Shown here in pieces: positions 1 through 24,302 of a stretch of DNA of 64,000 bases. Each line of letters starts with the position of its first letter. Position 1 is the stretch's first letter. The stretch covers positions 124,001 to 188,000 of IMG/VR virus record IMGVR_UViG_3300048591_000147. One strand, 5' to 3'. The notes under the pieces are model-generated. The model was not told the DNA's origin, searched no databases, and saw only the letters and a list, made by a program, of their open reading frames with translations. The translations under genes and the position numbers were made by a program.

Positions 1-204
1 CGCAAGAATCCAGTTAGCGTGCGCTATCCTGAGTCGTATTATGTCAAGGCATCGGACGCACTGGCTGAGGCTGGTATTAACCCTGATGCTGATGGCTACA
101 AGTATGGCAGCGCGTGGAAGTTTGAAGCTGTACCAGCTCGGGTGATTGCGTGGTTATTCTCTTTTGAGATGGCAGATGATCTGCCAGTAGTGTGGGCTAG
201 ATGA
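1..204 (+). CDS. Early-region hypothetical protein, probably 5'-truncated by the window edge
   Basis: Open frame from the window start to TGA at 202-204; same GC-rich codon style as its neighbours. Confidence 0.6.
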   Translation, partial: RKNPVSVRYPESYYVKASDALAEAGINPDADGYKYGSAWKFEAVPARVIAWLFSFEMADDLPVVWAR

Positions 205-212
205 CCAAAACT

Positions 213-245
213 GTTCAGCAATCGTTCAGCTAAGTGATGTATAAT
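213..245 (+). promoter_or_regulatory. Box-type early promoter 1: GTTCAG-N5-GTTCAG-N10-TATAAT
   Basis: GTTCAG 213-218 and 224-229, TATAAT 240-245, CATACCAAC leader 251-259, AGGA RBS, ATG 272. Confidence 0.85.
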
Positions 246-271
246 TCAATCATACCAACAAGGAACAGACC

Positions 272-517
272 ATGAACTCCAGCGAACTCAAGCGCAACAT
301 CGAACGTAACAATCCCGGTAGCCTGTTCTTTTCGCGTGGTGCCATGCAGAATGGCGGTGACACGATGCGCAACTATGGCGTCTGCACTGCAAAGATCATG
401 ACCCCAGATGGTGAAAAAGAGGTATGGGAATTGTATCGCCGTCAAGCCACCCCACGGGGTTACACTAGCTCAGTGTATTGGGACAAGGCAACATTCAAAG
501 TGGTCTACAAGGTCTGA
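272..517 (+). CDS. Early hypothetical protein (81 aa)
   Basis: ORF with its own promoter and AGGA RBS. Confidence 0.8.
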   Translation: MNSSELKRNIERNNPGSLFFSRGAMQNGGDTMRNYGVCTAKIMTPDGEKEVWELYRRQATPRGYTSSVYWDKATFKVVYKV

Positions 518-549
518 TTCAGCTAACGTTCAGGTTCTGAGCGTATAAT
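517..549 (+). promoter_or_regulatory. Box-type early promoter 2: ATTCAG-N5-GTTCAG-N10-TATAAT
   Basis: Half-sites 517-522 and 528-533, TATAAT 544-549; nearly identical to the promoter at 2797-2829. Confidence 0.85.
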
Positions 550-577
550 ACATTACATCAACCAAGGGAATGCAGCC

Positions 578-967
578 ATGATCCTGAACACTGTCGAAGC
601 CACCATCGCTTGCGAAGCTGCAACCACCATTCTGCTGGGGCATTTCCCGCATTTCATGGTCAATATTCGGGTGACGAGAATTCTTGGCGAGGTCGTTCAG
701 TTCACCGTTGCCAACGTTCCCACCGAAAAGGATGCGCCCTATGGGATCATCCACAATGCATCCTTTCTGCTCAAAGGTCTGATCCAGACTGACCGCAAGG
801 GAGCATACATGGAGAATCCGATTCTGTCTGGCCGTCACCTGAAGTTCCGCAAGATCAGCGGTTCCAGTGAAGCCGAAGTGTTGCAAAAGTTCGTGGCATG
901 GTGTGTCAAGAACAAGGCGGAAATTCTCGCCATCGTCCCGAAACTTCGCGGGTATGAGGTCAGTTAA
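578..967 (+). CDS. Early hypothetical protein (129 aa)
   Basis: ORF with promoter and AAGGGA RBS. Confidence 0.8.
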   Translation: MILNTVEATIACEAATTILLGHFPHFMVNIRVTRILGEVVQFTVANVPTEKDAPYGIIHNASFLLKGLIQTDRKGAYMENPILSGRHLKFRKISGSSEAEVLQKFVAWCVKNKAEILAIVPKLRGYEVS

Positions 968-995
968 GCTGGCGTTCAGGTTGTGGGGGTATAAT
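963..995 (+). promoter_or_regulatory. Box-type early promoter 3: GTTAAG-N5-GTTCAG-N10-TATAAT
   Basis: Half-sites 963-968 and 974-979, TATAAT 990-995, CATACCAA leader. Confidence 0.8.
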
Positions 996-1022
996 ACAAC
1001 ACATACCAAGGGAGAACGCAAA

Positions 1023-1247
1023 ATGTCAAAGAAACGACGTGTCATGGTTCGCGAGACAACGATACGTTTCTCCCCAGTCTTCGAGTGTGAGTGTTGCGGG
1101 AAGGTAGAGGTTGGAGTTGCATTCTCTCAGACATTCTATCATCGTCTACCAGAGCTTGACGAGATAGATGTTCCAGCGCATACGCTGCCACCCGGCTGGA
1201 TAATGTTTCACAATCTCCAGTACTGCGTCAATTGTAACATCGAATGA
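1023..1247 (+). CDS. Small Cys-rich (Zn-ribbon-like) early protein
   Basis: Start moved to ATG 1023 (GGAG RBS); CECC...CVNC motifs. Confidence 0.7.
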   Translation: MSKKRRVMVRETTIRFSPVFECECCGKVEVGVAFSQTFYHRLPELDEIDVPAHTLPPGWIMFHNLQYCVNCNIE

Positions 1248-1268
1248 GCCCTTCGGGGCTCTTTTTTA
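1246..1268 (+). terminator. Rho-independent terminator
   Basis: GAGCCC-TTCG-GGGCTC followed by a T-tract. Confidence 0.9.
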
Positions 1269-1285
1269 TTGTGCCACCACTTCCT

Positions 1286-1333
1286 CCGACCACGCACCCA
1301 TTTTACTACACCCACCCTGAACAGAACCTGAAC
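1286..1333 (-). promoter_or_regulatory. Reverse-oriented box element: GTTCAG-N5-GTTCAG-N11-TAAAAT-GGGTGCGTGGTCGG (motif copy A)
   Basis: CTGAAC at 1317-1322 and 1328-1333 on +; ATTTTA 1300-1305; CCGACCACGCACCC 1286-1299. Confidence 0.7.
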
Positions 1334-1350
1334 GACAAGTCATTGATTTT

Positions 1351-1383
1351 GTTCAGCTTGTGTTCAGCTAACTACTGTAGAAT
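1351..1383 (+). promoter_or_regulatory. Box-type early promoter 4: GTTCAG-N5-GTTCAG-N10-TAGAAT
   Basis: Half-sites 1351-1356 and 1362-1367, extended -10 TG-TAGAAT ending 1383, GAGG RBS. Confidence 0.85.
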
Positions 1384-1410
1384 ACTGACTATACCCAATG
1401 AGGATAGATT

Positions 1411-1788
1411 ATGAACACTGCTGAAAGTCGGCTGAAAGAAACGATGTTCATCGTCGAGGCGACCTCATTCGAACGGCATATGCTCTGGGAAACCAATCAC
1501 ACGAAAGTCAAGTGGGAACAGATTTACGATGGATGGCTGGTGACAGTGGGTAAGCTGGATGATCGTCCCTGCTGTATCGATACTTCATGGGCGCGCATCA
1601 ATGGACAATTGGTCATGTTCTATGAACAGTGTAGCCAAGTGACTGACTGTCTTCAGACTGATGCATGGTTGGATGATCATTTCAATGGTACATGGGATAA
1701 CGGTCACCGTCGAGCGCGAACAGATGCGCAGAATTTTCATCTTTGTTTGAACGCGATCAGGGATGCAAATAACCCGGAGGCATTGTAA
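1411..1788 (+). CDS. Early hypothetical protein (125 aa)
   Basis: ORF with promoter and RBS. Confidence 0.8.
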   Translation: MNTAESRLKETMFIVEATSFERHMLWETNHTKVKWEQIYDGWLVTVGKLDDRPCCIDTSWARINGQLVMFYEQCSQVTDCLQTDAWLDDHFNGTWDNGHRRARTDAQNFHLCLNAIRDANNPEAL

Positions 1789-1789
1789 T

Positions 1790-1996
1790 ATGCAAAAGTC
1801 AGTTGTGATTGATTTGACAGTTCCCATCATGTTCATTACCAGTACGCTGGTGATTCTGAAATTTGTTGGAGCAATCAATCTACCATGGTTGTGGGTCTTT
1901 TTTCCTATCTGGGGCACCTACCTTCTTTTGTTTGTCATCTGGATGATGATCGCCTCCTTTGTTCTTATCATGGTGTTTCTTAAAATTACCCGTTGA
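1790..1996 (+). CDS. Small two-TM membrane protein
   Basis: ATG 1790 after GGAGG; hydrophobic sequence with LKFVGAINLPWLWVFFPIW pattern common in phage membrane proteins. Confidence 0.75.
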   Translation: MQKSVVIDLTVPIMFITSTLVILKFVGAINLPWLWVFFPIWGTYLLLFVIWMMIASFVLIMVFLKITR

Positions 1997-2021
1997 CACC
2001 TAATAAACTATTGGGTATAGT
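1993..2021 (+). promoter_or_regulatory. Canonical sigma70 early promoter
   Basis: TTGACA 1993-1998, 17-nt spacer, TATAGT 2016-2021. Confidence 0.85.
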
Positions 2022-2048
2022 CTCTACATCGTCAACGGAGATAGCCAA

Positions 2049-2426
2049 ATGACCACCGAACGGGTTGCCACGCTGGAAGACTTGCAAGGCGCGTATTCTG
2101 ACGTGTTCAAGGACGTCTATGGCTTTCGTCCCCGTGGTTCCGTTATCTGGAACGATGAGGAAGCGTTGAAGGGTGAATTGACGTACCTGTACGCTGAGCT
2201 TGAGCGTGTGATCGAACGCGAGAAGGGTGAGCAGGCAATCGCTGTAGCCGATTTTGAGCAACGGGTGACTGAGACTATCGCCTTGGGTGCTGGAACGCGA
2301 GAGAACGCGATTCGTTGGATTGCACAGGGCATTGATGACGCTGACCCCGATGGCGTATGTTACTCGCTTGGTTTGCCGTTTGGCTACCTTGGTCAAACGT
2401 ATCTCTTTGAGCGTGAAAGTGCTTGA
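2049..2426 (+). CDS. Early hypothetical protein (125 aa)
   Basis: GGAG RBS; YSDVFKDVYGFRPR motif recurrent in large-phage early proteins. Confidence 0.8.
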   Translation: MTTERVATLEDLQGAYSDVFKDVYGFRPRGSVIWNDEEALKGELTYLYAELERVIEREKGEQAIAVADFEQRVTETIALGAGTRENAIRWIAQGIDDADPDGVCYSLGLPFGYLGQTYLFERESA

Positions 2427-2450
2427 CGTTCAATAAAATCGCGATATAAT
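2423..2450 (+). promoter_or_regulatory. Canonical sigma70 early promoter
   Basis: TTGACG 2423-2428, 16-nt spacer, TATAAT 2445-2450, CATACCAAC leader. Confidence 0.8.
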
Positions 2451-2479
2451 CTCAACCATACCAACTAAGGACCAACGTC

Positions 2480-2806
2480 ATGAAAGTTGCCCCGATTCCT
2501 CCCCGTGATCCGAACAGCACGCCCAATCCCGAATTCGTGCGCCTGTTGAAGGAAGGTCTGCCACGGTTGTGGAATGGCCATGGCTTCGAGGGTCGCAATG
2601 AAGAATTCATCTGCCACACCTTTGATCGTTGGGACGAGTGTACCCCAGCAATCCGTGAAATGATCAGCGCTCGTCTGTATGACAAATGGCATCGAACCTA
2701 TCACGATTGGGCTGATCGGTCCAAGACTATGAACAAGTTCACGAAGGCAGAGATCCAAGATGGTCGCAAGCGTTGGATGCTGGACTTGATCGCTGAGTTC
2801 AGCTAG
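2480..2806 (+). CDS. Early hypothetical protein (108 aa)
   Basis: ORF with AAGGA RBS. Confidence 0.75.
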   Translation: MKVAPIPPRDPNSTPNPEFVRLLKEGLPRLWNGHGFEGRNEEFICHTFDRWDECTPAIREMISARLYDKWHRTYHDWADRSKTMNKFTKAEIQDGRKRWMLDLIAEFS

Positions 2807-2829
2807 CGTTCAGGTTCTGAGCGTATAAT
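2797..2829 (+). promoter_or_regulatory. Box-type early promoter 5: GTTCAG-N5-GTTCAG-N10-TATAAT
   Basis: Half-sites 2797-2802 and 2808-2813, TATAAT 2824-2829. Confidence 0.85.
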
Positions 2830-2857
2830 CTCAACCATACCAGACGAGGAACGAACC

Positions 2858-3106
2858 ATGTTCATGCGAATCGAAGATCAGAACGGGACGGTGTTGCTCT
2901 CTTCGGTGTATCCCGATGATCGTATCATGGACCCTGAAGCATGTCTGTTCGATTACTTGGGTGATTTTGAGCTTGATCGCGTGGTGGAAGTCTCTTGGCG
3001 TGAAGAGGCCAATGGATGCTACGAATATCGCGTGATTTTCTTCGAAGATGAAGAGAATCCCGATCACATCGTGGAGTCTGGCGCCTTCATCATCTCGGAT
3101 AGCTGA
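2858..3106 (+). CDS. Small acidic early protein (82 aa)
   Basis: GAGGA RBS; D/E-rich. Confidence 0.75.
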   Translation: MFMRIEDQNGTVLLSSVYPDDRIMDPEACLFDYLGDFELDRVVEVSWREEANGCYEYRVIFFEDEENPDHIVESGAFIISDS

Positions 3107-3108
3107 GT

Positions 3109-3291
3109 ATGGTACTATTCGTGTATGAACCGTCATGGCTGATTGACCCTGAAGATGAAATTCAACGGAGAATGATGATGGAAAAGGATTTGTCTCGCTA
3201 CGTGGAACAATGGGAGCCCACCATTTTCCGCTCCAAACACTACAAGGCTCGCGTGTTGCGCGCCAAGGCTCGGAGGATCAAGCAATGGTAG
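3109..3291 (+). CDS. Small hypothetical protein (60 aa)
   Basis: Starts 3 nt after the previous stop; followed by a hairpin. Confidence 0.5.
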   Translation: MVLFVYEPSWLIDPEDEIQRRMMMEKDLSRYVEQWEPTIFRSKHYKARVLRAKARRIKQW

Positions 3292-3295
3292 CTTC

Positions 3296-3317
3296 AAGCG
3301 CCCTTTCGGGCGCTTCT
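3296..3317 (+). terminator. Terminator-like hairpin
   Basis: AAGCGCCC-TTTC-GGGCGCTT; weak T-tract. Confidence 0.65.
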
Positions 3318-3332
3318 GGTATCTCAACCTTC

Positions 3333-3380
3333 CCGACCACGCACCCATTTTATACCAACCAACCTGAACCAACGCTGAAT
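3333..3380 (-). promoter_or_regulatory. Reverse-oriented box element: ATTCAG-N5-GTTCAG-N11-TAAAAT-GGGTGCGTGGTCGG (motif copy B)
   Basis: CTGAAC 3364-3369 and CTGAAT 3375-3380 on +; ATTTTA 3347-3352; CCGACCACGCACCC 3333-3346. Confidence 0.7.
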
Positions 3381-3411
3381 GAAACGCGCCAATAAATTTA
3401 CAATCAATTGC

Positions 3412-3440
3412 TTTACAAGCTAATCCATTAGGCGTATAGT
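3412..3440 (+). promoter_or_regulatory. Canonical sigma70 early promoter
   Basis: TTTACA 3412-3417, 17-nt spacer, TATAGT 3435-3440. Confidence 0.75.
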
Positions 3441-3467
3441 TCATCCATACCAGCTAGGGAGAACACC

Positions 3468-3845
3468 ATGGCCAAGCGAATCCAAAAGCCCGTCCTGTTG
3501 ACCAGCAAGACCCATCAGGTCATTGACAAGGATTTCATTGTCAAGGCATTGACGAAAAGCAATGCATGGTTGTTCCGCGCCATCGTGTCGATTTTCGAAT
3601 ACCAAACCGCTGACGAACAGACTGCCGAAGTCACCGCGCACGATAATGGCGTTGGCTTCAGTGGTGTTGATGCACAGATGATGTCCAGCTTCGCCAAACA
3701 GATCATCGAACATGGCAAGGGTAACAGCAAGTTCGCTAGCCCGCTGTCCCCGAAACAGATCGAATTGGCGCGCAAGCGTATGGTCAAGTATGCCGGACAA
3801 TTGCTGCGCATCGCGCAGAGCCGTTCAGCCGCCGTTCAGCTTTAA
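3468..3845 (+). CDS. Early conserved hypothetical protein (125 aa)
   Basis: GGGAG RBS; QTADEQ...NGVGF..DA...LSPKQ...KYAGQL pattern seen in large phages. Confidence 0.8.
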   Translation: MAKRIQKPVLLTSKTHQVIDKDFIVKALTKSNAWLFRAIVSIFEYQTADEQTAEVTAHDNGVGFSGVDAQMMSSFAKQIIEHGKGNSKFASPLSPKQIELARKRMVKYAGQLLRIAQSRSAAVQL

Positions 3846-3855
3846 CCTGTATACT
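3823..3855 (+). promoter_or_regulatory. Box-type early promoter 6: GTTCAG-N5-GTTCAG-N10-TATACT
   Basis: Half-sites 3823-3828 and 3834-3839, TATACT 3850-3855, CATACCAAC leader 3861. Confidence 0.85.
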
Positions 3856-3884
3856 ACTCACATACCAACCAAGGAAGCAAAACC

Positions 3885-4244
3885 ATGAAGTCGATTCGCG
3901 AAGCTCAAACGTTCGTCACCATTCTCAACCTGATTCAGGACCGCTCGCGCGAAATCCTCTGCGATATCGTGGACGCGCTGATCTTCAACCGTGAATCCGT
4001 CCAGTCCGTTCTGAATCGTTGGGGCATCAAGCTCAATGCGGAAGCTCCCGCGATGGCTCCGAACAGTGTCACCATCAACCATGGCGGGCTCGCCTTCAAC
4101 ATGACCATCGTCCAATACAGTCAGGTCGTCAGGCTGATTTACAGTGGCCAGTGGATCGAGGGTATCAAGGCCATTCGCGCAGCAACCAATTCCGGGCTGA
4201 AGGAAGCCAAGGACTTGGCCGAGTACATCCGCGATAACAAGTGA
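3885..4244 (+). CDS. Early protein with C-terminal ribosomal bL12 (L7/L12) CTD-like domain
   Basis: IEGIKAIRAATNSGLKEAKDLAE matches the bL12 KIxxIKxxRxxTGxGLKEAKxxVE signature. Confidence 0.7.
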   Translation: MKSIREAQTFVTILNLIQDRSREILCDIVDALIFNRESVQSVLNRWGIKLNAEAPAMAPNSVTINHGGLAFNMTIVQYSQVVRLIYSGQWIEGIKAIRAATNSGLKEAKDLAEYIRDNK

Positions 4245-4273
4245 TCCATTTTCAAAAACGTAATTTTATTCTG

Positions 4274-4313
4274 AACAACCCCGGATCAGCGATGGTCCGG
4301 GGTTGTTGTTTTT
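4274..4313 (+). terminator. Rho-independent terminator
   Basis: AACAACCCCGGATCA/TGGTCCGGGGTTGTT stem followed by a T-tract. Confidence 0.85.
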
Positions 4314-4331
4314 ATGCCACACCAGATTTTC

Positions 4332-4368
4332 TGGCGAGAATCGCCACAACTAATGGCGAAAATCGCCA
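4332..4368. promoter_or_regulatory. Tandem palindromic operators TGGCGA-N3-TCGCCA (x2)
   Basis: Palindromes with perfect 6-bp arms at 4332-4346 and 4354-4368, 22 bp apart. Confidence 0.7.
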
Positions 4369-4391
4369 CACAATATCAACCGTAAAAGCCC

Positions 4392-4420
4392 TTGTATCTT
4401 TAGTTTAATTGGCGTACAAT
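4392..4420 (+). promoter_or_regulatory. Sigma70 early promoter
   Basis: TTGTAT 4392-4397, 17-nt spacer, TACAAT 4415-4420, CATACCAAC leader, AGGAG RBS. Confidence 0.75.
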
Positions 4421-4445
4421 AGGCACATACCAACAGGAGAACACC

Positions 4446-4838
4446 ATGGAAATCGAAGTCGGGGTAGGGTACGATGATAATGGTGAAATCATCAAGAAAA
4501 TGCTGCCTGCGGTGTTCACCGTCTGTCAGAACTGCGAGGGTCATGGTTTTGTGCTGAACCCCAGCATGGCTGGCCATTGTTACACGCAGGATGAATTCAA
4601 TGATGCGTTCGATGACGAGGATGATCGTGCGGAGTATTTCAAGCGTGGTGGCAAGTATGACGTGCAGTGTCAGCTTTGCAAGGGTGTGCGCGTGGTGAAG
4701 GTCATCGCGGATGATGATCAACTGACTGACGAGCAGAAAGAGATCAGCAGAGCAAACGAGTCTTTTGAGATGGGTCTGCACATGGACGCATACTATGATG
4801 CAATGACGATGCGCGGAGAATCTGGCATCTGGGATTAA
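4446..4838 (+). CDS. Acidic early protein with DnaJ-like Zn-finger motifs
   Basis: CQNCEG.G and CQLCKG motifs. Confidence 0.75.
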   Translation: MEIEVGVGYDDNGEIIKKMLPAVFTVCQNCEGHGFVLNPSMAGHCYTQDEFNDAFDDEDDRAEYFKRGGKYDVQCQLCKGVRVVKVIADDDQLTDEQKEISRANESFEMGLHMDAYYDAMTMRGESGIWD

Positions 4839-5074
4839 TCGTTGGCGGTGCGATCAGTAGCAATGGACTGTAGGGTCGCACCGTCTATCATGAAATGCTG
4901 TATTAGATAATCCTAAATTAGAGTGACGGTGTACTACCACACTAACACACCCGCAGTCTCAATAACCTACCTTTTCGATACAACCGAAAAATCGCGCGAA
5001 GACTCAAAAGCATAGCACGAAAAATAGTTGAAAAATAGTGCTCTTTGGCACTTGTGTTATAAAATAATATCAGG

Positions 5075-5098
5075 CAAAATGAGTGCGTGGTCGGGGAA
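5075..5098 (+). repeat. Intergenic motif copy C (CAAAATGAGTGCGTGGTCGGGGAA)
   Basis: One mismatch to the 19-bp core of copies A/B/D; TTGTGT lies 17 nt upstream of CAAAAT. Confidence 0.8.
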
Positions 5099-5199
5099 CT
5101 CTGGCAGGCAAACGCCCTGCGGCAAAATGATCTTACGAAAGTGGTTGCACGGCATCGGCGCTATGGTATGATTCTCTCACCCCAACGGAGATACCCCAC

Positions 5200-5529
5200 A
5201 TGAGCCTGAGCCGCCTCCGCAACAAAGTCGAAGCCCGCATTGTCCGCGCCATCGTTTCGGACGCGCTGAAAATGGGTTACACCGTGTCGGTGTACGATGG
5301 TGAAGAGTTCGCCATCGAACGCTCCAGCAATCGTAGCGCCATCCTCGCCGAGTGTGCTGCCACTGACGAAGACCGCCTGTACTTCACCCGCAACGGTCAG
5401 ACGAAAGCCATCGGTGTGGTCTGGATCATCTACGGTGAGGGTGACACCTGCATGACTGACTGGACTGACACCGATGAAGTCAACGCCATCCTGAAGCGGG
5501 CCAACAAAATCGCTGGACACGATGACTGA
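5200..5529 (+). CDS. Early hypothetical protein (109 aa)
   Basis: Promoter TTGCAC(5145)-N16-TATGAT(5167), GGAG RBS. Confidence 0.8.
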   Translation: MSLSRLRNKVEARIVRAIVSDALKMGYTVSVYDGEEFAIERSSNRSAILAECAATDEDRLYFTRNGQTKAIGVVWIIYGEGDTCMTDWTDTDEVNAILKRANKIAGHDD

Positions 5530-5544
5530 AATAGTGTAGCAGAC

Positions 5545-5568
5545 AAGCCCCCGAAAGGGGGCTTTTTC
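5545..5568 (+). terminator. Rho-independent terminator
   Basis: AAGCCCCC-GAAA-GGGGGCTT followed by a T-tract. Confidence 0.9.
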
Positions 5569-5618
5569 TGGACCATCTGCGGTACAATTGATTACTTTAC
5601 AGGTACAAAGCAATATGC

Positions 5619-5708
5619 CAAAATGGGTGCGTGGTCGGAGGAACTGGCGGACACCGCCGCGCGCTTCGCGCTAAGGCTGGCAATTTCCCCGACCGCCATC
5701 CCATTTTG
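5619..5708. repeat. Motif copies D (+) and E (-) forming a 90-bp imperfect inverted repeat with two internal hairpins
   Basis: CAAAATGGGTGCGTGGTCGGAGGAA...TTTCCCCGACCGCCATCCCATTTTG; internal GGCGG-ACA-CCGCC and GCGCG-CTT-CGCGC. Confidence 0.75.
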
Positions 5709-5893
5709 AACTAACTTATAAAGCAATGGAAGTGCCATTCGTCGGAAAGTCTAGATGGGGGTCGCTAGCTTCTGGCCGATGCTCGGGCGATCCAGCGGAT
5801 GATCGTTACACCGTTGCAAATGGCGCACGCCGCCTGATATACTACCTTCATCGGGCGGCAATCCTGCTGCCCGACACCTTCGGAGAAAGCACA

Positions 5894-6604
5894 ATGGAAT
5901 TCCTCAAGAACATCAGTGTCAAGTCGGATTTTGGTTTCTGGATCACCATGGGCATGCTGGAGGCGATCTATGTGCTGGCAGAGTGTGCCGGTGGACGCTT
6001 CGCCGCGATCATGGGTTACACTCCGGTGGGCAAAGACTGGACGGTGACGCCCGTCTACGATGCCACGTTCACCAGTCGCTTCGATACTGCCAAGCTCTAT
6101 GCTCGCAAGCTGGAAGCCTTGCAGGCGATCACCTTCGAGGACGTGGCCGATGCCATCGCGAAACAGCCGAAACTCTCTGCGCTCGAACCTGCTGAACTGC
6201 TGGAACTGTTCAATGCTCGCAAGGCAATGGAAGTCGCCAGCCTGCTCCGCACTCGCGAGGATACCGCAGCACACCGCGAAGGTCAGGCACGCTGCCACGC
6301 CACCGTGGAGGATGGTCTGCCCAATGGTGTGCGTGTGCACTACGTCACACAGAAGGGCGCTGACGGGCTCATGCATCCGGTCCTGCGTGATGGTCTGCCC
6401 ATCGCTGAAAGCATCCGTGTGCACGCACTGGAACAGTCTCGCACGTATCGTCAGGCTGGTGTGCGCAAGGTAGTGAACAGTGGTGCGCCAGTGCTCATGG
6501 GCAATGCTATCAGCACGCTACTGAACAAGCGCAGCGTGGGCATCACATCGTTCACACTGCGTGACAACTATGAAGCACTGCGCATTGACGGAGCCACGCT
6601 CTAA
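5894..6604 (+). CDS. Early hypothetical protein (~236 aa), very GC-rich
   Basis: Start moved to ATG 5894 (GGAG RBS; promoter TTGCAA 5814-N18-TATACT 5838). Confidence 0.8.
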   Translation: MEFLKNISVKSDFGFWITMGMLEAIYVLAECAGGRFAAIMGYTPVGKDWTVTPVYDATFTSRFDTAKLYARKLEALQAITFEDVADAIAKQPKLSALEPAELLELFNARKAMEVASLLRTREDTAAHREGQARCHATVEDGLPNGVRVHYVTQKGADGLMHPVLRDGLPIAESIRVHALEQSRTYRQAGVRKVVNSGAPVLMGNAISTLLNKRSVGITSFTLRDNYEALRIDGATL

Positions 6605-6628
6605 CAGTAACAGACAGTAACACAACGC

Positions 6629-6657
6629 GAAGCCCCAGCATGCTGGGGCTTTCGTTT
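6629..6657 (+). terminator. Rho-independent terminator ending the GC-rich block
   Basis: AAGCCCCAGC-AT-GCTGGGGCTT then TCGTTT. Confidence 0.8.
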
Positions 6658-6795
6658 GAGTATGATCAGATAGTAACTAGTTAGTAACTTGATAATGGTC
6701 AGGGGGATTATGTGATAGGTGAAAAACAGTTTGGGGTTACGATGAGTTACTTTATTTACTCATTATATATAATCACTCCGCCGGGGGATCAAGCC

Positions 6796-6830
6796 ATTTA
6801 ATTTCTATACCCTATTTAATTTCTATACCC
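6796..6830. repeat. Tandem 17-bp direct repeat ATTTAATTTCTATACCC x2
   Basis: Copies at 6796-6812 and 6814-6830 in the non-coding GC/AT junction. Confidence 0.9.
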
Positions 6831-6958
6831 CTTTTTCCATTCTATCCAAAATCCTATAATATTTTCTGTAATTCTATCACACGATTTGGCCATTCTCTCT
6901 AGACGATTTGTTCCGCGTATTTACTTGATGGTATCTCTGAAAAATTTCCAGAAAAATT

Positions 6959-7129
6959 TTAACGCTTATTGATCAAGAGGATAGCGTCTGTCATATTCTT
7001 TAATAGTACATATATCGACGCATTTACTTGTAATTTAGCTTTTGTTATCTCTGGCGTATCATTCTCTTCTGCTTCAAATGTTAAATCAACAAGTGCAAAA
7101 GCCTTGGCAACTCTTTCTGCGTTATTCAT
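6959..7129 (-). CDS. Small hypothetical protein (56 aa, MNNAERVAKAF...), below the ORF-track cutoff
   Basis: Translated by hand; starts just after the cca stop with an AAGGA RBS. Confidence 0.6.
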   Translation of the reverse strand: MNNAERVAKAFALVDLTFEAEENDTPEITKAKLQVNASIYVLLKNMTDAILLINKR

Positions 7130-7131
7130 TA

Positions 7132-8220
7132 TCATTCCTTAATTATATTATTCAAAGCTTCCTTACGTAATCTCTTTAATTCAATACCAAATGCAGCACC
7201 AGTTAAACCTTGTTCCAATAGATGTTGACTTGATACCGAACGCACCCTGTCGATTAACCCCATAAATTTTTCAGTATCAAAGTCGTTGAAAACTATTTCA
7301 CATATCCTGATAAACTTATCCAGTGTATCGGTTTTATGGTGTACGTCCAGACTTTCAATAATTTTGAATAATTCTTCATAATCATTGTTCAATGCGTGTT
7401 GTATCTTTGGCAGATTTTTGTAAGTTAGTATTGCCAACCTCTTTTCATTTGTTGGTATCTTTAGTTTTTCACAGATATCATGTATATCACCTTCGTTACG
7501 GCTATTAGACATTAATATGGAAAACACAACATCGCATGATTCTTTCTTATCATTCACTGCTTTATCCAAAGCATTGTTTACAGTTTCATTCAATGATAAG
7601 TGCGGCACCAGTCTATTCAATGCTCCACACTTATCCAAGACTCTAAAGAAGATGCTTGGATTTGTTTTTGAGAAGGTCTTTTTGATTTCTGCCCATACTC
7701 TTTCTGACGTTAAATTGTCTACTTCGCCATTTGTCACCATTTCTTTCATTAAATGTAATGTCTGTTCATGCAAAATGAAATCATAGGTAGCGCAAAATCT
7801 CGCTACTCTTAAGATGCGTACCGGGTCTTCTCTAAATGCTTCTGAAACATGGCGTATGACACCATTGCTAAGATCTGATAAACCATTAAACGGATCTATA
7901 AGATTTCCATTGGAATCAATTGCCATAGCATTGATTGTGATGTCTCTACGGAAGAGATCATCCTTGAGTGTTACCCCATTGGTACTTACAGAGAAACCAT
8001 TGTATCCTTTTCCTGTTTTTCTTTCTGTTCTCGCCAAGGCGTATTCGTTGCCAGTGTCTGGATGAAGAAAGACTGGAAAGTCTGCACCAACGGGTTTGAA
8101 ACCATTAGATAACATTTCCTCTTCAGAAGAATTTATGACAACATAATCTAGGTCAGATGATTTCTTTCCTAATAATAAATCTCTGACCGCACCACCAACG
8201 AGATATACGTTTTTGTTCAT
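7132..8220 (-). CDS. cca: tRNA nucleotidyltransferase (CCA-adding enzyme, class II)
   Basis: LVGGAVRD...DLDYVV, EYALARTERK, DLFRRDITINAMA, EDPVRILRVARF, ERVWAE motifs. Confidence 0.93.
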   Translation of the reverse strand: MNKNVYLVGGAVRDLLLGKKSSDLDYVVINSSEEEMLSNGFKPVGADFPVFLHPDTGNEYALARTERKTGKGYNGFSVSTNGVTLKDDLFRRDITINAMAIDSNGNLIDPFNGLSDLSNGVIRHVSEAFREDPVRILRVARFCATYDFILHEQTLHLMKEMVTNGEVDNLTSERVWAEIKKTFSKTNPSIFFRVLDKCGALNRLVPHLSLNETVNNALDKAVNDKKESCDVVFSILMSNSRNEGDIHDICEKLKIPTNEKRLAILTYKNLPKIQHALNNDYEELFKIIESLDVHHKTDTLDKFIRICEIVFNDFDTEKFMGLIDRVRSVSSQHLLEQGLTGAAFGIELKRLRKEALNNIIKE

Positions 8221-14448: not shown

Positions 14449-14931
14449 ATGAAAAGTCCGTATGTAAGAGAGGTTGTTGAGATCAATGGCAAGCGATATC
14501 TAGAACTTGTTGATCATTGTGGGTGGAAAGCTGGTGATAAAATCAGCTTTAGACACCAGTTGCCCGGATATACCTTAAATGTTGTTACAGAAGAGCCCGG
14601 AATCACCATCATGGCAGATCACGGTTCGACTGGTATCTGGGACTATCAGACTCGCTATATGTTGGAATACAAGGAAGTCCCAGAATTTGATGAAGAAGAT
14701 ATTAACCTCATCAAGTTGTTTATGGAATTATATGAGACTTGGCCTTGGGATTCTGATGATGCAGCAGAGATAGAGTCTGCCAAAAATGGATATGGTGTGG
14801 CGCTATTATTAAAGTCTAAACACCCAGAGATGAATATCTATTTTTATAATTATCAAAATGTAGTAAAAGAAGTACCAGCGGTATTTGACAGCAGAGCTAA
14901 AGTAGAATTAATGGAGATTAAAAAATGTTAA
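14449..14931 (+). CDS. Hypothetical protein
   Basis: 160-aa ORF coupled to the RNA ligase. Confidence 0.65.
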   Translation: MKSPYVREVVEINGKRYLELVDHCGWKAGDKISFRHQLPGYTLNVVTEEPGITIMADHGSTGIWDYQTRYMLEYKEVPEFDEEDINLIKLFMELYETWPWDSDDAAEIESAKNGYGVALLLKSKHPEMNIYFYNYQNVVKEVPAVFDSRAKVELMEIKKC

Positions 14932-16238
14932 GTGTAAAGAATGTAGGGTCGAACTACCTAGCACAGGTTGTGAAACTTGTAAATGTTAGAAAGCACACAA
15001 ATGCGGACAAGCTACAGTGCGTTACTATTCAAGGTAACAACGTTGTAACGGGTCTTGACGCAAAGGACGGTGCCGTATATGTGTATTTTCCTTTGGAATG
15101 TACTATTAATTTAGAATTTTTGGCATATTCTAATTCGTTCAGAGATAAGACCCTGAACGCTGATACTACTGTTGCCGGATTCTTTGAACAGAACGGTCGT
15201 GTGAAAGCCGTTAAGCTTCGTAATGAAAAGTCAGAAGGTTACATCGTGCCTGCTCATTCAATTGAGGATTGGTTGAAGACGAAGAACATCACCATAAACT
15301 TGGCTAATAGTATTACAGAGGAATTTGACACTATTTCTGGTATTTTGATTTGTGAAAAATACACCATCAAGTACAGCAGGCAGGCATCTCAAGGTGGTGG
15401 TAAGCAGAAGAATAAAGGCAAAGAAAAGCGTTTTGAAAGATTGATTTCAACACAGTATTCTTTAGCCGAAGACACTTCTGCACTGAAGAAGAATATCCAT
15501 AGGATCGATCCAGAGGATCAGATCACAATCAGTTACAAGATGCATGGTTGTAACTTCTCAATGGGTCGGGTGTTGTGTAATAAACCATTAAAGTGGTATG
15601 AAAAGCTGTTGAAGAAGATTGGTGTGAATGTTGTCGATACTCACTATGATACTATTTACGCTTCGCGTAATGTGATCAAAAACCAGTATGAGGAAGAGAG
15701 CACACAGCATTACTATGATGCTAATATCTGGCGCATTATTGCTGACAAATACAAGGACACTTTAAAAGACGGTATTACTATCCATGGTGAAATCGTGGGA
15801 CAGTTGCCAACTGGTTCGTGGATTCAGAGTAAGTATGACTATGGCGTTCCAGAAAAACAGGCAGAGTTGTATGTGTACAGAATGTTCTATAGATCACCAT
15901 CTGGTGATGTGTTCGAATTCAACACCGAACAGCTTATAGCTTATTGTGATAAGGTTGGTCTGAAGTATGTCCCCGTGTTTTATCAGGGTAAAGCTAAAGA
16001 CTTATTTGACATAAGTGTCTCCGAGCACTGGCACCAGACATTCCTACAGAAGTTGATTGAAAAGTATAACGAGAAAGACTGTTATATGTGTAAGAATAAG
16101 GTGCCAGAAGAAGGTATCACATTGATTTTAAACAGTAAAAATGATTTCGAAGCGTTCAAATTGAAATCATTCAGATTCCTACAACAGGAAACTGAAGAAC
16201 TGGACAAGGGTCAAGTTAATATAGAGGATGAAGTATAA
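14925..16238 (+). CDS. ATP-dependent RNA ligase, DRB0094-like (N-terminal OB domain plus Rnl2-type ligase)
   Basis: HTNADKL OB domain; motif I KMHGCN; IHGEIVG; EEGITL; FKLKS. Confidence 0.88.
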   Translation: MLSVKNVGSNYLAQVVKLVNVRKHTNADKLQCVTIQGNNVVTGLDAKDGAVYVYFPLECTINLEFLAYSNSFRDKTLNADTTVAGFFEQNGRVKAVKLRNEKSEGYIVPAHSIEDWLKTKNITINLANSITEEFDTISGILICEKYTIKYSRQASQGGGKQKNKGKEKRFERLISTQYSLAEDTSALKKNIHRIDPEDQITISYKMHGCNFSMGRVLCNKPLKWYEKLLKKIGVNVVDTHYDTIYASRNVIKNQYEEESTQHYYDANIWRIIADKYKDTLKDGITIHGEIVGQLPTGSWIQSKYDYGVPEKQAELYVYRMFYRSPSGDVFEFNTEQLIAYCDKVGLKYVPVFYQGKAKDLFDISVSEHWHQTFLQKLIEKYNEKDCYMCKNKVPEEGITLILNSKNDFEAFKLKSFRFLQQETEELDKGQVNIEDEV

Positions 16239-16266: not shown

Positions 16267-16325
16267 GACATGTGCGGTACGGATAATGTAGTATGCTTAA
16301 TCTACCTAAACGGATGAAAAATAAT

Positions 16326-22066: not shown

Positions 22067-23656
22067 TTACAATGACGCGATGATTCTTGGTACATCTGGT
22101 GAGAACCCCACTACATCCAACTGCTTAGGATCTTTTGGATCAGCAATTGTGAACTGTGTTGCGGTTGTAGCACACACAATCAAGCCAGAGTTCTTTCTCG
22201 CTGCATTACGATAATGCTGTAGTGCCTGAGAAGGATGACCATTTGCACCGAAATAAGTTTCGGAGTCTGTTATAACCACGAACTTATCAACGTCCAGCTT
22301 GTTCTGAGTAGCATATACCATTGGCAATGCACAGTCAGTTGCTCCGAACCCTAAACGCTGAGCCTTACGGATTGCGTCTTCGATTCTTGACTTATATGTG
22401 ATATCCAATTCAACAAACTTATGTGAAAAACCCATAATTACAGAATTCTGATTCTGTTTGTTGATTGCCATCGCCAATGCTACTGAAGCTTCTGCTGCTG
22501 AGAAGTTTGGAATACCAGCCACCTGACTTCCCATCATGCTTCCCGAGATGTCAACACCTAACAAATAATTTTCATTAGTTGGTTCGATATTGTCAAATGA
22601 ATTATAAAATGCGTCTTGCAACGAATCCATAATTCTCGCTGATGGTGTCCAGACATTGGAACCCTTCAAACCACGACCGCTGCCATAAATCTTGCTTGCG
22701 ATCAGAATTGAGATAGGGTGAATTCTGCTCTTTGCCAACCACTCACGATTTGTCAACTTGCTAGCAACTAGCTTTTCACTAGCTGATAACTTGCTCAACA
22801 AACCATTTGAAGCCATGGTGCCCAAATTACGAAGCAGCGCTGTTGCAGGCATCTTTGGCAGCATCGCATCCCAGACTTCAGGACTGTTCAGAAACTGCGT
22901 TGGAAGCGCTTCACGGGGCAAATTATAGTCTTCAACCAACTTGACCACTTCTTTTACACTTGAAGCTGTTGTAGCCTTCAAATATCCGTGAACAATCGCT
23001 GGCAATTCAGCAGCTTCGATAGACGTATTCAATTTTGCAAACTTGAATAGATTGTTCTGAACTTCAGAATCTGCCTTCGCATGACATAGATGTAACACGT
23101 CATGATGTGACCAACCATCACGCTGACGGTACTTAACCAACTGGTACGCTAGCTGGTCAGCATCCTTATCCTTATACCATTTAGTCAACGCCTTACGCAC
23201 AGACGAACCGAAACCGCCACCCATCTGCTTGTACTGATCCACGAATGAGAAGAAGTCTGTTGAAGTTCTGCAAACCTTTGCCAAGTTAGCCAACGCTGCT
23301 TTCTTCACTTCTGGGTTACCATTCTTGACTGCGACAGCCAGTGCGAACACCGCTGGTGCATTCTTGACAGCTAAACCCTTATCAGATACTTCGGCAATAC
23401 GTTCTACAACACGTACACCGTCAGTAACCAATAACTTCAATAGGATTTCAGCATTGTCTGCTGACATCTTATTCGCTGATACATAATAAGAACCAGAGTT
23501 TGATCCTAAGATCAAGAAACGATCTAGCTGGTCCCAAATCGATGCTACGAAAGAATAACCACCAGCATTATTCTTTTCCTGATTTGAACCTACGATCTTC
23601 TGAGTCTGTGGTGTTGTTGCGCTCTTTGACAAGCTTGTTAACTTTGCGTATGACAT
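22067..23656 (-). CDS. rsr: Ro60/Rsr-like RNA-binding protein (TROVE plus vWA domains)
   Basis: NNAGGY, LDRFLILGS..GSYY, KYRQRDGWSHHD, ALLRNLG, MIDAS DISGSM, TDCALPM, ITDSET. Confidence 0.95.
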   Translation of the reverse strand: MSYAKLTSLSKSATTPQTQKIVGSNQEKNNAGGYSFVASIWDQLDRFLILGSNSGSYYVSANKMSADNAEILLKLLVTDGVRVVERIAEVSDKGLAVKNAPAVFALAVAVKNGNPEVKKAALANLAKVCRTSTDFFSFVDQYKQMGGGFGSSVRKALTKWYKDKDADQLAYQLVKYRQRDGWSHHDVLHLCHAKADSEVQNNLFKFAKLNTSIEAAELPAIVHGYLKATTASSVKEVVKLVEDYNLPREALPTQFLNSPEVWDAMLPKMPATALLRNLGTMASNGLLSKLSASEKLVASKLTNREWLAKSRIHPISILIASKIYGSGRGLKGSNVWTPSARIMDSLQDAFYNSFDNIEPTNENYLLGVDISGSMMGSQVAGIPNFSAAEASVALAMAINKQNQNSVIMGFSHKFVELDITYKSRIEDAIRKAQRLGFGATDCALPMVYATQNKLDVDKFVVITDSETYFGANGHPSQALQHYRNAARKNSGLIVCATTATQFTIADPKDPKQLDVVGFSPDVPRIIASL

Positions 23657-24219: not shown

Positions 24220-24294
24220 TGGAGCAAAATTCGGGAATCGAACCCGATTCTCTAGACTGGCAATCTAGGGCAACAACCAATATACCAATTTTGC
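24220..24294 (-). tRNA. tRNA-Gly(GCC)
   Basis: Cloverleaf: acceptor GCAAAAT/ATTTTGC, anticodon arm CTAGA-TTGCCAG-TCTAG, T arm TCGGG-TTCGATT-CCCGA, U73 and encoded CCA. Confidence 0.92.
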
Positions 24295-24302
24295 TTTTTA
24301 TC

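What the first reader, a model, noticed from the sequence alone, without database searches (positions are those of the whole stretch)
1286..5708. Unexplained 19-bp intergenic motif AAAATGGGTGCGTGGTCGG, five copies, each looking like a promoter with no gene
Seen: copies A (1286-1304, -), B (3333-3351, -), C (5076-5094, +), D (5620-5638, +) and degenerate E (~5689-5707, -) are all intergenic; A, B and D sit just after terminators. The 5' part reads as a -10 box (TAAAAT/CAAAAT): A and B have the GTTCAG tandem box 11 nt upstream, C has TTGTGT and D has TTTACA 17 nt upstream. No RBS/ORF follows, yet the downstream GGGTGCGTGGTCGG(A/G)(G/A) is more conserved than the promoters themselves. Inference: either a family of small or antisense RNAs with a common 5' end (A and B would run antisense into early genes), RNA-polymerase decoy or stalling sites, transcription-primed origins, or binding sites for a protein acting on the first-injected DNA.
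Basis: partly seen in the sequence, partly recalled or inferred. Interest (0 to 1): 0.75.

Follow-up and report, generated by a model that had tools for sequence, protein, structure and literature searches.

The report
Promoter-coupled conserved transcript-start cassette family
A 20-base sequence repeated about 19 times in the early region of an uncultivated 315-kb jumbo phage is the core of a special set of promoters whose RNAs should all begin with the same eight letters; it is real and conserved in sister phages, but what the shared start is for has not been shown.

Summary
The window lies in a 314,956-bp jumbo phage. The unit TAAAAT-GGGTGCGTGGTCGG-RR (form alpha), or GGG[T/C/A]TGG[A/C]GGTCGG (form beta, which includes copy E), occurs about 19 times. 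All copies lie at genome 66-130 kb, a GC-rich island, on both strands. Two sister phages carry 11-14 copies each, and 71 non-redundant contexts were collected in all. Conservation has sharp edges, from the T of the -10 box to +13; flanks are unrelated.

Every real copy sits behind one of two upstream modules:
- a canonical -35 at 17 nt, or
- the tandem (G/A)TTCAG boxes of the phage's ordinary mRNA promoters.

Anchoring on those modules alone, 11/11 tandem-box promoters with TAAAAT carry the motif and 0/27 with TATAAT-type boxes do.

The predicted start (G7) gives RNAs beginning GUGGUCGG plus purines. These are mostly non-coding:
- antisense copies sit 14-18 nt from the convergent gene's terminator;
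- sense copies often follow a terminator;
- alpha/beta pairs such as D/E form long hairpins.

Function is unproven. My best guess is an RNA 5' tag, with the phage Ro60 as candidate reader. A DNA-level operator or initial-transcribed element is a serious rival. Coding, tRNA mimicry, Rfam families, REPIN elements, origins and chance were tested and rejected or left unsupported.

The parts
1286..1305 (-). Copy A: -10 box TAAAAT (1305..1300) plus core GGGTGCGTGGTCGG (1299..1286). Predicted start is the G at 1293.
   Evidence: Exact match. Start inferred from the usual 7-nt distance after the -10 box, with C at -1 and G at +1.
1317..1333 (-). Tandem GTTCAG-N5-GTTCAG boxes of copy A, 11 nt upstream of its -10. 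This is the same module as in the phage's mRNA promoters.
   Evidence: In one search, 11/11 tandem-box promoters with TAAAAT carry the motif.
1246..1267 (+). Terminator hairpin plus T-run of the convergent upstream operon. Copy A fires back into its reverse face (A-run plus hairpin), which begins 18 nt after the motif.
   Evidence: Terminator scan (L027 15246-15261 equals window 1246-1261). Spacing statistics.
3333..3352 (-). Copy B: -10 TAAAAT (3352..3347) plus core. Predicted start is the G at 3340.
   Evidence: Exact match.
3364..3380 (-). Tandem boxes ATTCAG-N5-GTTCAG of copy B.
3296..3315 (+). Hairpin ending the upstream + strand operon. Copy B transcribes into it from the other side.
   Evidence: Read from the sequence; context list.
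5052..5094 (+). Copy C: -35 TTGTGT (5052-5057), 17-nt spacer, -10 CAAAAT (5075-5080), core GAGTGCGTGGTCGG (5081-5094). Predicted start 5087. It lies upstream of the promoter and gene at 5200-5529.
   Evidence: One mismatch.
5596..5638 (+). Copy D: -35 TTTACA (5596-5601), 17-nt spacer with TG, -10 CAAAAT (5619-5624), core (5625-5638). Predicted start 5631. It sits directly after the terminator at 5545-5567.
   Evidence: Exact match. Called by the independent sigma-70 scan (L027 19596-19624). Also found by the class-2 anchored scan.
5689..5707 (-). Copy E: beta-form core GGGATGGCGGTCGG with CAAAAT and no convincing upstream promoter. It is the inverted partner of D.
5619..5708 (+). D/E long imperfect hairpin: A-run, alpha arm, about 50-nt interior with two small hairpins, beta arm, U-run. 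It has the architecture of a bidirectional terminator, or of a roughly 80-nt RNA whose two ends pair.
   Evidence: MFE -49.4 kcal/mol, z = -4.97. Three further alpha/beta loci in relatives share only the terminal stem, with no covariation.
22067..23656 (-). Ro60 orthologue (TROVE plus Ro60 vWA domains). It is only a candidate reader of the shared RNA 5' end and is not shown to be linked.
   Evidence: Pfam E 1e-49 and 1e-39. Present in all three motif-positive genomes. No canonical Y RNA nearby.

Best explanation
The 19-mer is the downstream half of a dedicated promoter type. It comprises a TAAAAT -10 box (often with an extended TGn), a GGG discriminator, and the first eight or so transcribed bases.

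This fixed half is fused to either of two interchangeable upstream modules. One is a host-type -35 at 17 nt with an AT-rich palindromic spacer. The other is the tandem (G/A)TTCAG boxes that also drive the phage's ordinary mRNA promoters. Host RNA polymerase should therefore start at the G seven bases after the -10 box and make RNAs that all begin 5'-GUGGUCGG (beta form GAGGUCGG), followed by a few purines and then unrelated sequence.

Most of these RNAs are non-coding:
- Copies co-directional with the genes restart transcription next to a terminator and give long leaders.
- Antisense copies (A and B here) start 14-18 nt beyond the convergent operon's terminator and run back through it.
- Where an alpha and a beta copy face each other (D/E), the RNA folds end-to-end into a long bulged hairpin.

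I infer that the shared 5' end is selected at the RNA level as a recognition tag. The most likely reader is the phage's own Ro60 orthologue, which has no recognisable Y RNA.

What is shown: the family, its sharp boundaries, its strict coupling to promoter architecture, and its conservation in sister phages. What is inferred: the start site, RNA-level function, and the Ro60 link.
For: - Not chance: 0 matches in shuffles. It is the top non-tandem 12-mer family in the genome.
- 71 non-redundant promoter-linked contexts have flanks under 85% identical. The information block runs sharply from -6 to +13, then purines (81% purine and 7% C at +14..+19), then noise.
- Promoter-anchored scans that do not use the motif: 11/11 tandem-box promoters with TAAAAT carry it, against 0/27 with TATAAT-type boxes. 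Seven of ten TT[GT]ACN-N16-18-[TC]AAAAT sites carry it, all seven with 17-nt spacing. An independent sigma-70 scan calls four copies.
- Conserved exactly in two sister jumbo phages whose Ro60 proteins are only 55-63% identical to this one, and in metagenome contigs.
- No canonical phage RNA polymerase gene was found, so host polymerase is implied.
- Fixed geometry to reversed terminators in 16 contexts. All minus-strand copies are of the tandem-box class.
- DNA-level control already has other candidate sites: the upstream boxes and the palindromic spacers.
- Ro60 lead: Ro60 is present in 3/3 motif-positive genomes and absent from the complete motif-less relative G004. No Xanthomonas or Stenotrophomonas phage is listed among the Ro60 hits, and those relatives lack the motif. 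No YrlA or Y_RNA match anywhere near Ro60. GGUCGGA is one base from the vertebrate Ro60 contact GGUCCGA, and Ro60 contacts mainly the 5' strand (PMC4201824).
Against: - No transcript data. The runs that hold the locus behave as DNA.
- The invariant block includes bases that would not be transcribed: TAAAAT (never TATAAT) and GGG. That fits a DNA-level unit at least as well.
- Natural downstream sequences do not keep the tag more exposed or more paired than shuffles do (p = 0.04 at 50 nt; 0.56 and 0.76 at 80 and 120 nt).
- No covariation in the hairpin loci.
- Ro60 lead is weak. The defining CGAA / GNCGAA motif of bacterial and phage Y RNAs is not met. The copies lie 16 kb or more from Ro60. 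About 19 copies far exceeds the 1-4 Y RNAs usually found. A 488-kb phage with a 40%-identical Ro60 lacks the motif. The co-occurrence is confounded by relatedness. The complex prediction was not run for protein-RNA.
Confidence: 0.4

Rival explanations
1. DNA-level element. The block from -10 to +13 is one functional DNA unit. It could be an asymmetric operator for a phage regulator that switches all of these promoters together (and may block read-through, like a stoperator). Or it could be an initial-transcribed sequence that sets open-complex stability, escape or early pausing, or that loads an antitermination factor onto RNA polymerase. In this view the RNA is a by-product.
For: The TAAAAT variant of the -10 box and the GGG discriminator are invariant although they would not be transcribed, and spacing to GGTCGG is fixed. 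The tag-accessibility test was null. Copies sit next to terminators in either orientation in about 44% of contexts. From my own knowledge, strong T5 promoters have conserved transcribed regions that affect clearance, lambda Q acts at the initial transcribed region, and L5 stoperators are asymmetric 13-14-bp sites.
Against: Strand-specific purine richness and GG enrichment continue to +20/+30, beyond any plausible operator. Upstream boxes and palindromic spacers already supply regulator sites. There is no -10-like pause element in the transcribed part. No candidate regulator was identified.
Confidence: 0.3
2. Mobile or recombinogenic boundary cassette. The unit, often together with a terminator, is a promoter/stem-loop cassette that marks module borders in a hyperplastic early region, like the PeSL cassettes of T4-type phages. 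It is kept uniform by recombination and gene conversion between copies, and the conserved start has no role of its own.
For: All copies lie in a GC-rich island of small genes. Homology between related strains breaks exactly at motif and promoter cassettes: loose ends at 1274, 1308, 1337 and 3330, and joints at 1335>1993 and 2816>3332. Terminator adjacency. One inverted pair shares 11 extra bases, consistent with recent copying.
Against: Conversion would homogenise flanks too, yet identity stops abruptly at -6 and +13 in 71 contexts, and two unrelated upstream modules are joined to the same block. The block is identical across phages whose Ro60 proteins are only 55-63% identical to this one. 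No Y1 transposase is present for a REPIN-like mechanism.
Confidence: 0.15
3. The reverse complement is the functional strand. CCGACC..CCC-AUUUU would be the 3' half of terminators for opposite-strand or read-through transcripts, and the alpha/beta pairs are complete bidirectional terminators.
For: D/E and three other loci form A-run / long stem / U-run hairpins. Keeping TAAAAT rather than TATAAT preserves a U4 tract on the other strand. Partner copies without promoters (E, L042:7935) still retain AAAAT, GGG and GGTCGG.
Against: Only 4 of about 70 contexts have a partner. Convergent copies do not share extended complementarity. This does not explain the invariant promoter modules upstream of every solitary copy.
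Confidence: 0.08
4. Transcription-primed replication origins. The G-rich non-template start would favour R-loops.
For: G-rich, C-poor first 20-30 nt directly after a strong promoter.
Against: About 19 sites in both orientations. GC skew simply follows transcription direction, with no origin-like signal at the cluster. No linked AT-rich unwinding element recurs after the motif.
Confidence: 0.04
5. Start of a family of tiny proteins. ATG-GGT-GCG-TGG-TCG would encode MGAWS, and the beta form MGWRS.
For: An ATG is embedded in the block, and several variants are synonymous in that frame (GGT/GGA/GGC, GCG/GCA, AGG/CGG).
Against: ORF lengths look random (6 to more than 50 codons). Nothing is conserved after residue 6. 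There is no ribosome-binding site, and the ATG lies upstream of the predicted start.
Confidence: 0.02

Closest known systems
PeSL (promoter-early stem-loop) cassettes of T4-type phages (from my own knowledge: Arbiol et al. 2010)
   Same: Repeated promoter-plus-hairpin units that flank small ORFan genes in a plastic early region. Mosaic breakpoints between related genomes fall at the cassettes.
   Different: Here the most conserved part is not the promoter or the stem-loop but the 14 bases after the -10 box. Two unrelated upstream modules share it. Many copies point antisense into the terminator instead of following it.
Y RNAs bound by Ro60 (PMC4201824; phage Yrl RNAs, PMC12135203)
   Same: The phage encodes Ro60 and has no recognisable Y RNA. 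GGUCGGA near the predicted 5' end is one base from the vertebrate contact GGUCCGA. The D/E RNA has the Y-RNA outline: about 80 nt, ends paired in a bulged stem, internal loop.
   Different: No CGAA / GNCGAA motif, no tRNA-like domain, no Rfam match, and not next to Ro60. There are about 19 copies, most of them without any 3' partner strand. Binding is untested.
Stoperators of mycobacteriophage L5-type phages (own knowledge)
   Same: An asymmetric site of about 14 bp, repeated some 20 times in short intergenic regions of one phage lineage, with near-perfect conservation.
   Different: Stoperators are not tied to a -10 box at a fixed distance. Here every copy is the downstream half of a promoter, and no repressor is known.
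Conserved initial-transcribed regions and promoter-proximal control: T5 strong promoters, lambda Q / PR', HK022 put, lambda nut (own knowledge)
   Same: Sequence just after the start site is functionally important. A short RNA and nearby terminators are part of the unit.
   Different: No -10-like pause element, no boxA/boxB, and no put-like double stem-loop conserved downstream. Those systems have one or two sites per genome, not about 19.
Bacterial sRNAs with a 5' seed, and cis-antisense RNAs
   Same: Own promoter, conserved 5' end, variable body, hairpin 47-58 nt from the start in the antisense subfamily.
   Different: The hairpin is the reverse face of another gene's terminator and usually lacks its own U-tract. 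A single seed shared by about 19 loci, with no identified target.

Membership tests
Sigma-70-type promoter | -35-like and -10-like hexamers at 16-18 nt spacing | tested here: met
   Seven copies in the genome have TT[GT]ACN-N17-[TC]AAAAT. An independent scanner calls four of them. About 60% have TG at -9/-8. The tandem-box class lacks a -35 at 17 nt but matches the architecture of the phage's 27 mRNA promoters.
Sigma-70-type promoter | Transcription actually starts 5-9 nt after the -10 box | not testable with these tools
   The public runs holding the locus behave as DNA and are kept as unstranded contigs.
Y RNA (Ro60 partner) | Conserved Ro60-contact motif near the 5' end (GGUCCGA in animals; GNCGAAN0-1G / CGAA in bacteria and phages) | tested here: not met
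   The motif reads GGUCGG followed by A or G: one mismatch to the animal form, and CGGA/CGGG instead of CGAA.
Y RNA (Ro60 partner) | 80-130 nt RNA whose 5' and 3' ends form a long bulged stem around a large internal loop | tested here: inconclusive
   Met by D/E and three related loci, but with no covariation. Not met by the roughly 65 solitary contexts.
Y RNA (Ro60 partner) | Encoded next to the Ro60 gene | tested here: not met
   The nearest copy is 16 kb from Ro60 in this genome and about 20 kb away in G001 and G002.
Y RNA (YrlA type) | tRNA-like T and D arms; match to the Rfam model | tested here: not met
   No YrlA or Y_RNA match at E up to 10 at the motif copies or around Ro60.
Y RNA (Ro60 partner) | Physical binding to Ro60 | not testable with these tools
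   The complex-prediction job was not folded for a protein-RNA pair and must not be counted.
PeSL-like promoter/stem-loop boundary cassette | Promoter adjacent to a terminator-like stem-loop at borders of small-gene modules, with mosaic breakpoints at the cassettes | tested here: met
   31 of 71 contexts have an adjacent terminator-like hairpin by a strict finder. Spacing is fixed in 16 antisense contexts. Breakpoints fall at cassettes in related strains.
Intrinsic (bidirectional) terminator | GC-rich stem directly followed by a U-tract, with an A-tract on the other side | tested here: inconclusive
   True for the alpha/beta pairs if the whole alpha arm is transcribed from upstream. Solitary copies have no 5' arm.
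REPIN / REP element | Inverted doublets plus a RAYT (Y1 transposase) gene | tested here: not met
   No PF01797 match in the genome, although the controls did match. Doublets are only 4 of about 70 contexts.
tRNA or tRNA-like gene | Cloverleaf detected by ARAGORN or Rfam; similarity to the phage's own tRNAs | tested here: not met
   No tRNA call at any copy. The best identity to the 5' ends of the 34 phage tRNAs is 10 of 14.
lambda-type nut / HK022 put antitermination site | Conserved boxA plus boxB hairpin, or a conserved double stem-loop, downstream of the start | tested here: not met
   Sequence beyond about +22 carries no information in 71 contexts. A small GAAAA-loop hairpin follows only a few copies.

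The most novel reading that the evidence does not exclude
The shared 5' end is a handle for the phage Ro60, and the variable bodies act as guides. Antisense copies start a fixed 14-18 nt beyond a convergent operon's terminator, so their RNA would pair with that mRNA's structured 3' end and leave the Ro60-bound handle next to the mRNA's 3' terminus. Ro60, with host PNPase, could then degrade early messages on schedule. That would be a programmable, Y-RNA-like guide system with about 19 guides per genome.
Probability: 0.08. Interest if true: 0.85.

Novelty: new variant of a known kind. Interest (0 to 1): 0.6.

Why it matters
Repeated promoter cassettes are known in large phages, but here selection acts hardest on the first transcribed bases rather than on the promoter. 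The same start is wired to two different upstream control modules, and it is aimed both with and against the genes.

If the shared start is an RNA tag, this lineage makes a family of about 19 tagged non-coding and antisense RNAs. That would give a phage Ro60 protein, whose partners in Gram-negative jumbo phages are unknown, a concrete and testable set of candidates.

If it is a DNA element, it defines a co-regulated set of host-polymerase promoters with a new kind of downstream control site.

Either way it is a simple handle for dissecting early gene timing in an uncultivated group of jumbo phages.

Tried and rejected
- Rfam at gathering and permissive thresholds over the window, the motif cluster and the Ro60 neighbourhood: only tRNAs.
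- tRNA mimicry: no ARAGORN call at any copy, and at most 10/14 identity to the phage's own tRNAs.
- Coding start MGAWS/MGWRS: ORF lengths look random, no RBS, ATG upstream of the predicted start.
- 5'-3' panhandles between convergent copies: only one pair shares extra identity. Adjacent orientations are random-like (17 convergent, 16 divergent, 32 same).
- Conserved RNA structure in alpha/beta loci: only the invariant terminal stem, no covariation.
- Selection for an exposed or a paired tag: null.
- REPIN-like mobility: no Y1 transposase.
- Replication origin from skew: no signal.
- Analogous element in a motif-less relative: none among the over-represented 12-mers of G004.
- Bacterial genomes: five hits, all chance contexts. 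Four metagenome hits (L036, L049, L058, L060) were likewise chance matches without promoters.
- Literature search for the sequence: only unrelated primers.
- Read laying: the runs are labelled RNA-seq but behave as DNA from related strains, so they give no start sites.
- Ro60-RNA complex prediction: not folded, so no evidence either way.
- Ro60 search in the long metagenome contigs: those records are not held.

Full report
**Setting.** The window is positions 124,001-188,000 of a 314,956-bp viral genome with direct terminal repeats. Its genes mark it as a large tailed phage: ribonucleotide reductase, DNA polymerase, glycosyltransferases, an RNA ligase, a CCA-adding enzyme, a Ro60 orthologue, and 34 tRNAs in the whole genome. 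The nearest cultured relatives are XacN1-like jumbo phages of Xanthomonas and Stenotrophomonas, at only 41-43% DNA-polymerase identity. No canonical multisubunit RNA polymerase gene was found, and the single-subunit search was uninformative because its controls did not ring. The only sigma-like match is a weak, sub-threshold ORF far away. Early transcription therefore presumably relies on the host enzyme.

**The observation.** A, B and D match the 19-mer exactly and C has one mismatch, at the stated coordinates and strands. No match occurred in 100 shuffles. E is a four-mismatch version.

**The family is larger.** A genome-wide search gives 11 exact copies and several variants, about 19 in all. 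All lie between 65.8 and 129.7 kb, on both strands. This stretch is a compositional island of 41-50% GC against about 37% elsewhere, packed with small genes. Two forms recur:
- alpha: GGGTGCGTGGTCGG
- beta: GGG[T/C/A]TGG[A/C]GGTCGG. E is a beta copy.

The motif is the most over-represented 12-mer family in the genome apart from one coding tandem repeat.

**Conservation elsewhere.**
- Two other uncultivated jumbo phages carry 11 and 14 copies: G001 (306,759 bp, complete) and G002 (a 129,621-bp fragment). Most copies are exact, and they are again clustered.
- A metagenome scan added 32 loci.
- After removing near-duplicate contexts and four chance hits without promoters, 71 contexts remain whose flanks are less than 85% identical.
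- The information profile is a block with sharp edges. It starts at the T of TAAAAT (-6 relative to the first G), runs to +13, is followed by three mostly purine positions and a weak TGG near +20, and then drops to noise.
- Part of this sharpness is ascertainment, since loci were seeded with the exact word. The unbiased tests below do not depend on that.
- More distant relatives lack the motif: G003, G004, Xoo-sp13, XacN1 and RAS14. G004 shows no analogous over-represented promoter-linked word.
- Five hits in bacterial genome assemblies are chance contexts, about the number expected.

**Coupling to promoters.** I searched the genome only for the upstream modules.
- Among 38 tandem-box promoters, all 11 with a TAAAAT -10 box continue with the motif. 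All 27 with TATAAT, TAGAAT and similar boxes continue with an ordinary mRNA leader (a conserved CATACCAAC..AGGA, then ATG).
- Among ten sites of the form TT[GT]ACN-N16-18-[TC]AAAAT, seven carry the motif. All seven have 17-nt spacing and lie on the + strand at 71-130 kb.
- An independent consensus scanner calls four of these as sigma-70-type promoters.
- About 60% of copies have TG one base upstream of the -10 box.

The motif is therefore the fixed downstream half of a promoter whose upstream half comes in two kinds. With the usual 7-nt distance, and a C-then-G step at that point, the start should be the seventh base of the core. That gives RNAs beginning GUGGUCGG (alpha) or GAGGUCGG (beta). 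This start site is inferred, not observed.

**What the transcripts would be.** Downstream sequence is heterogeneous. Four arrangements recur:
1. *Antisense copies.* All seven minus-strand copies in this genome run against the prevailing + direction of the genes, and all have the tandem-box module. In 16 independent contexts the motif ends 14-18 nt (one case 10) before an A-run and GC hairpin that form the reverse face of the convergent gene's terminator. The hairpin end then lies 47-58 nt from the predicted start. A and B are of this type.
2. *Sense copies.* These mostly have the canonical -35, whose T-rich bases often overlap the U-tract of a preceding terminator. A short spacer follows, sometimes a small hairpin, then another promoter or a gene.
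3. *Copies leading straight into a gene* with a ribosome-binding site.
4. *Facing alpha/beta pairs.* Four loci have an alpha copy facing a beta copy 60-75 nt away. D/E is one of them and folds at -49.4 kcal/mol, z = -4.97.

The four alpha/beta loci share only the terminal stem. The interiors are unrelated and no pair covaries. I read them as two cassettes back to back that happen to build a bidirectional-terminator-like hairpin, not as a conserved structured RNA. The pairs are always alpha with beta and never alpha with alpha, which may reflect avoidance of a perfect inverted repeat. By a strict finder, 44% of contexts have a terminator-like hairpin immediately adjacent.

**RNA level or DNA level?**

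*For RNA:*
- The strand-specific purine richness (81% purine and 7% C at +14..+19) and GG enrichment reach +20 to +30.
- The same product is wired to two control modules.
- The upstream boxes and the AT-rich palindromic spacers of the canonical class already offer sites for DNA-binding regulators.
- The antisense subfamily has a fixed RNA-like layout.

*For DNA:*
- The invariant part includes untranscribed bases: TAAAAT (never TATAAT) and the GGG discriminator.
- A test for selection on tag accessibility was null.

I give the RNA-tag reading about 0.4 and a DNA-level operator or initial-transcribed element about 0.3.

**The Ro60 lead.** The phage encodes a clear Ro60 orthologue but no recognisable Y RNA, even at permissive thresholds. 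Published work says Ro60 contacts mainly the 5' strand of a terminal stem, at GGUCCGA in animals and GNCGAAN0-1G / CGAA in bacteria and phages (PMC4201824; PMC12135203). The motif has GGUCGGA.

Ro60 is present in all three motif-positive genomes and absent from the complete motif-less relative G004. No Xanthomonas or Stenotrophomonas phage is listed among the Ro60 hits, and those relatives lack the motif.

Against this:
- The CGAA hallmark is not met.
- The copies are 16-20 kb from Ro60.
- Most copies have no 3' partner strand.
- A 488-kb phage with a 40%-identical Ro60 has no motif.
- The co-occurrence is confounded by relatedness.
- The complex prediction was not run for a protein-RNA pair and counts for nothing.

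Ro60 remains a candidate, not a finding.

**Rejected or unsupported ideas.**
- *Coding.* An ATG inside the block would encode MGAWS or MGWRS, and some variants are synonymous in that frame. But ORF lengths are random, nothing is conserved after residue 6, there is no ribosome-binding site, and the ATG lies upstream of the predicted start.
- *tRNA mimicry.* Not supported.
- *Panhandles between convergent copies.* Not general.
- *REPIN-like mobility.* No transposase.
- *Origin function.* No support from skew.
- *Reads.* The laid runs are DNA from related strains. They show only that homology between strains breaks at the cassettes, as for promoter/stem-loop cassettes in T4-type phages.

**Verdict.** This is a real, lineage-specific and strongly constrained element. 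It is the downstream half of a dedicated promoter class that should give a family of mostly non-coding and antisense transcripts a common 5' end. It resembles known promoter/terminator boundary cassettes, but it differs in where selection acts. Its function is open and cheaply testable.

Noticed in passing
window 205-250, 520-560, 965-1000, 1350-1385, 2795-2830, 3825-3855: The ordinary early promoters have tandem GTTCAG-N5-GTTCAG boxes 10-11 nt upstream of TATAAT. That places the boxes at about -39..-34 and -28..-23, not at a sigma-70 -35 position; it is more like an activator box. A conserved mRNA leader (A)CATACCAAC(N)AAGGA follows, before the ATG. There are 27 such promoters in the genome.
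   Followed up: partly
genome 99.1-122.4 kb and loci L013, L014 (outside the window); weaker in window 5602-5618: The canonical-class motif promoters have AT-rich palindromic spacers between -35 and -10 (TATAATCAATTATA, TGTAATCAATTACA). These look like operators for a dimeric regulator.
   Followed up: no
window 7132-8220(-), 14925-16238(+), 16293-17561(+), 19979-20761(-), 22067-23656(-), 24220-24393(-): An RNA-repair and tRNA gene set: CCA-adding enzyme, RNA ligase, AAA ATPase, metallophosphoesterase, Ro60 orthologue, and tRNA-Gly and tRNA-Ser. No canonical Y RNA was detected next to Ro60.
   Followed up: partly
window 6600-7130: An AT-rich, gene-free stretch where the + and - gene blocks converge. 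It has a direct repeat of ATTTAATTTCTATACCC (about 6797-6835) and several AGTAAC/GTTACT repeats, which look iteron-like.
   Followed up: no
genome 65-130 kb (window 1-6000 is its right end): A compositional island of 41-50% GC in a genome that is otherwise about 37% GC. It coincides with the small-gene region and with all motif copies.
   Followed up: partly
genome 100663-100767 (L026:5663-5767), outside the window: A tRNA scoring 61 bits with a 36-nt insertion in the anticodon loop (possibly an intron). Its 5' end, GGGAGCGUGGCCAAG, loosely resembles the motif.
   Followed up: partly
genome 76266-76343, outside the window: ARAGORN calls a tRNA with a CUA anticodon, reported as tRNA-Pyl. It would read amber stop codons.
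   Followed up: no
genome 99166 and 122423 (+); loci L011, L013, L043, L046: A small hairpin, TGTGGTAAAAATACAACA or TGTTGCGAAAAAACAACA, lies 20-23 nt after some canonical-class motif copies. Only three copies occur in this genome.
   Followed up: partly
genome 116986-117075 (after copy 116972+), outside the window: The reverse complement of a tRNA T-arm (GAGGGTTCGACTCCCTC) abuts the motif directly, so on the other strand a T-arm runs straight into the motif's complement. No tRNA or Y RNA model matches. A similar case is in G002 (L014:8074).
   Followed up: partly
genome 122389(+) and window 1286-1304 (copy A, -): These two inverted copies, 2.9 kb apart, share 11 further identical bases after the core (AGGAAGTGGTG). 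They are the only pair among 272 to do so. A transcript spanning them could pair its two ends over about 25 nt.
   Followed up: yes
genome 217674-217802(-), outside the window: A weak, sub-threshold match to sigma-70 region 2 in a 214-aa ORF. It may be a phage late sigma-like factor.
   Followed up: no
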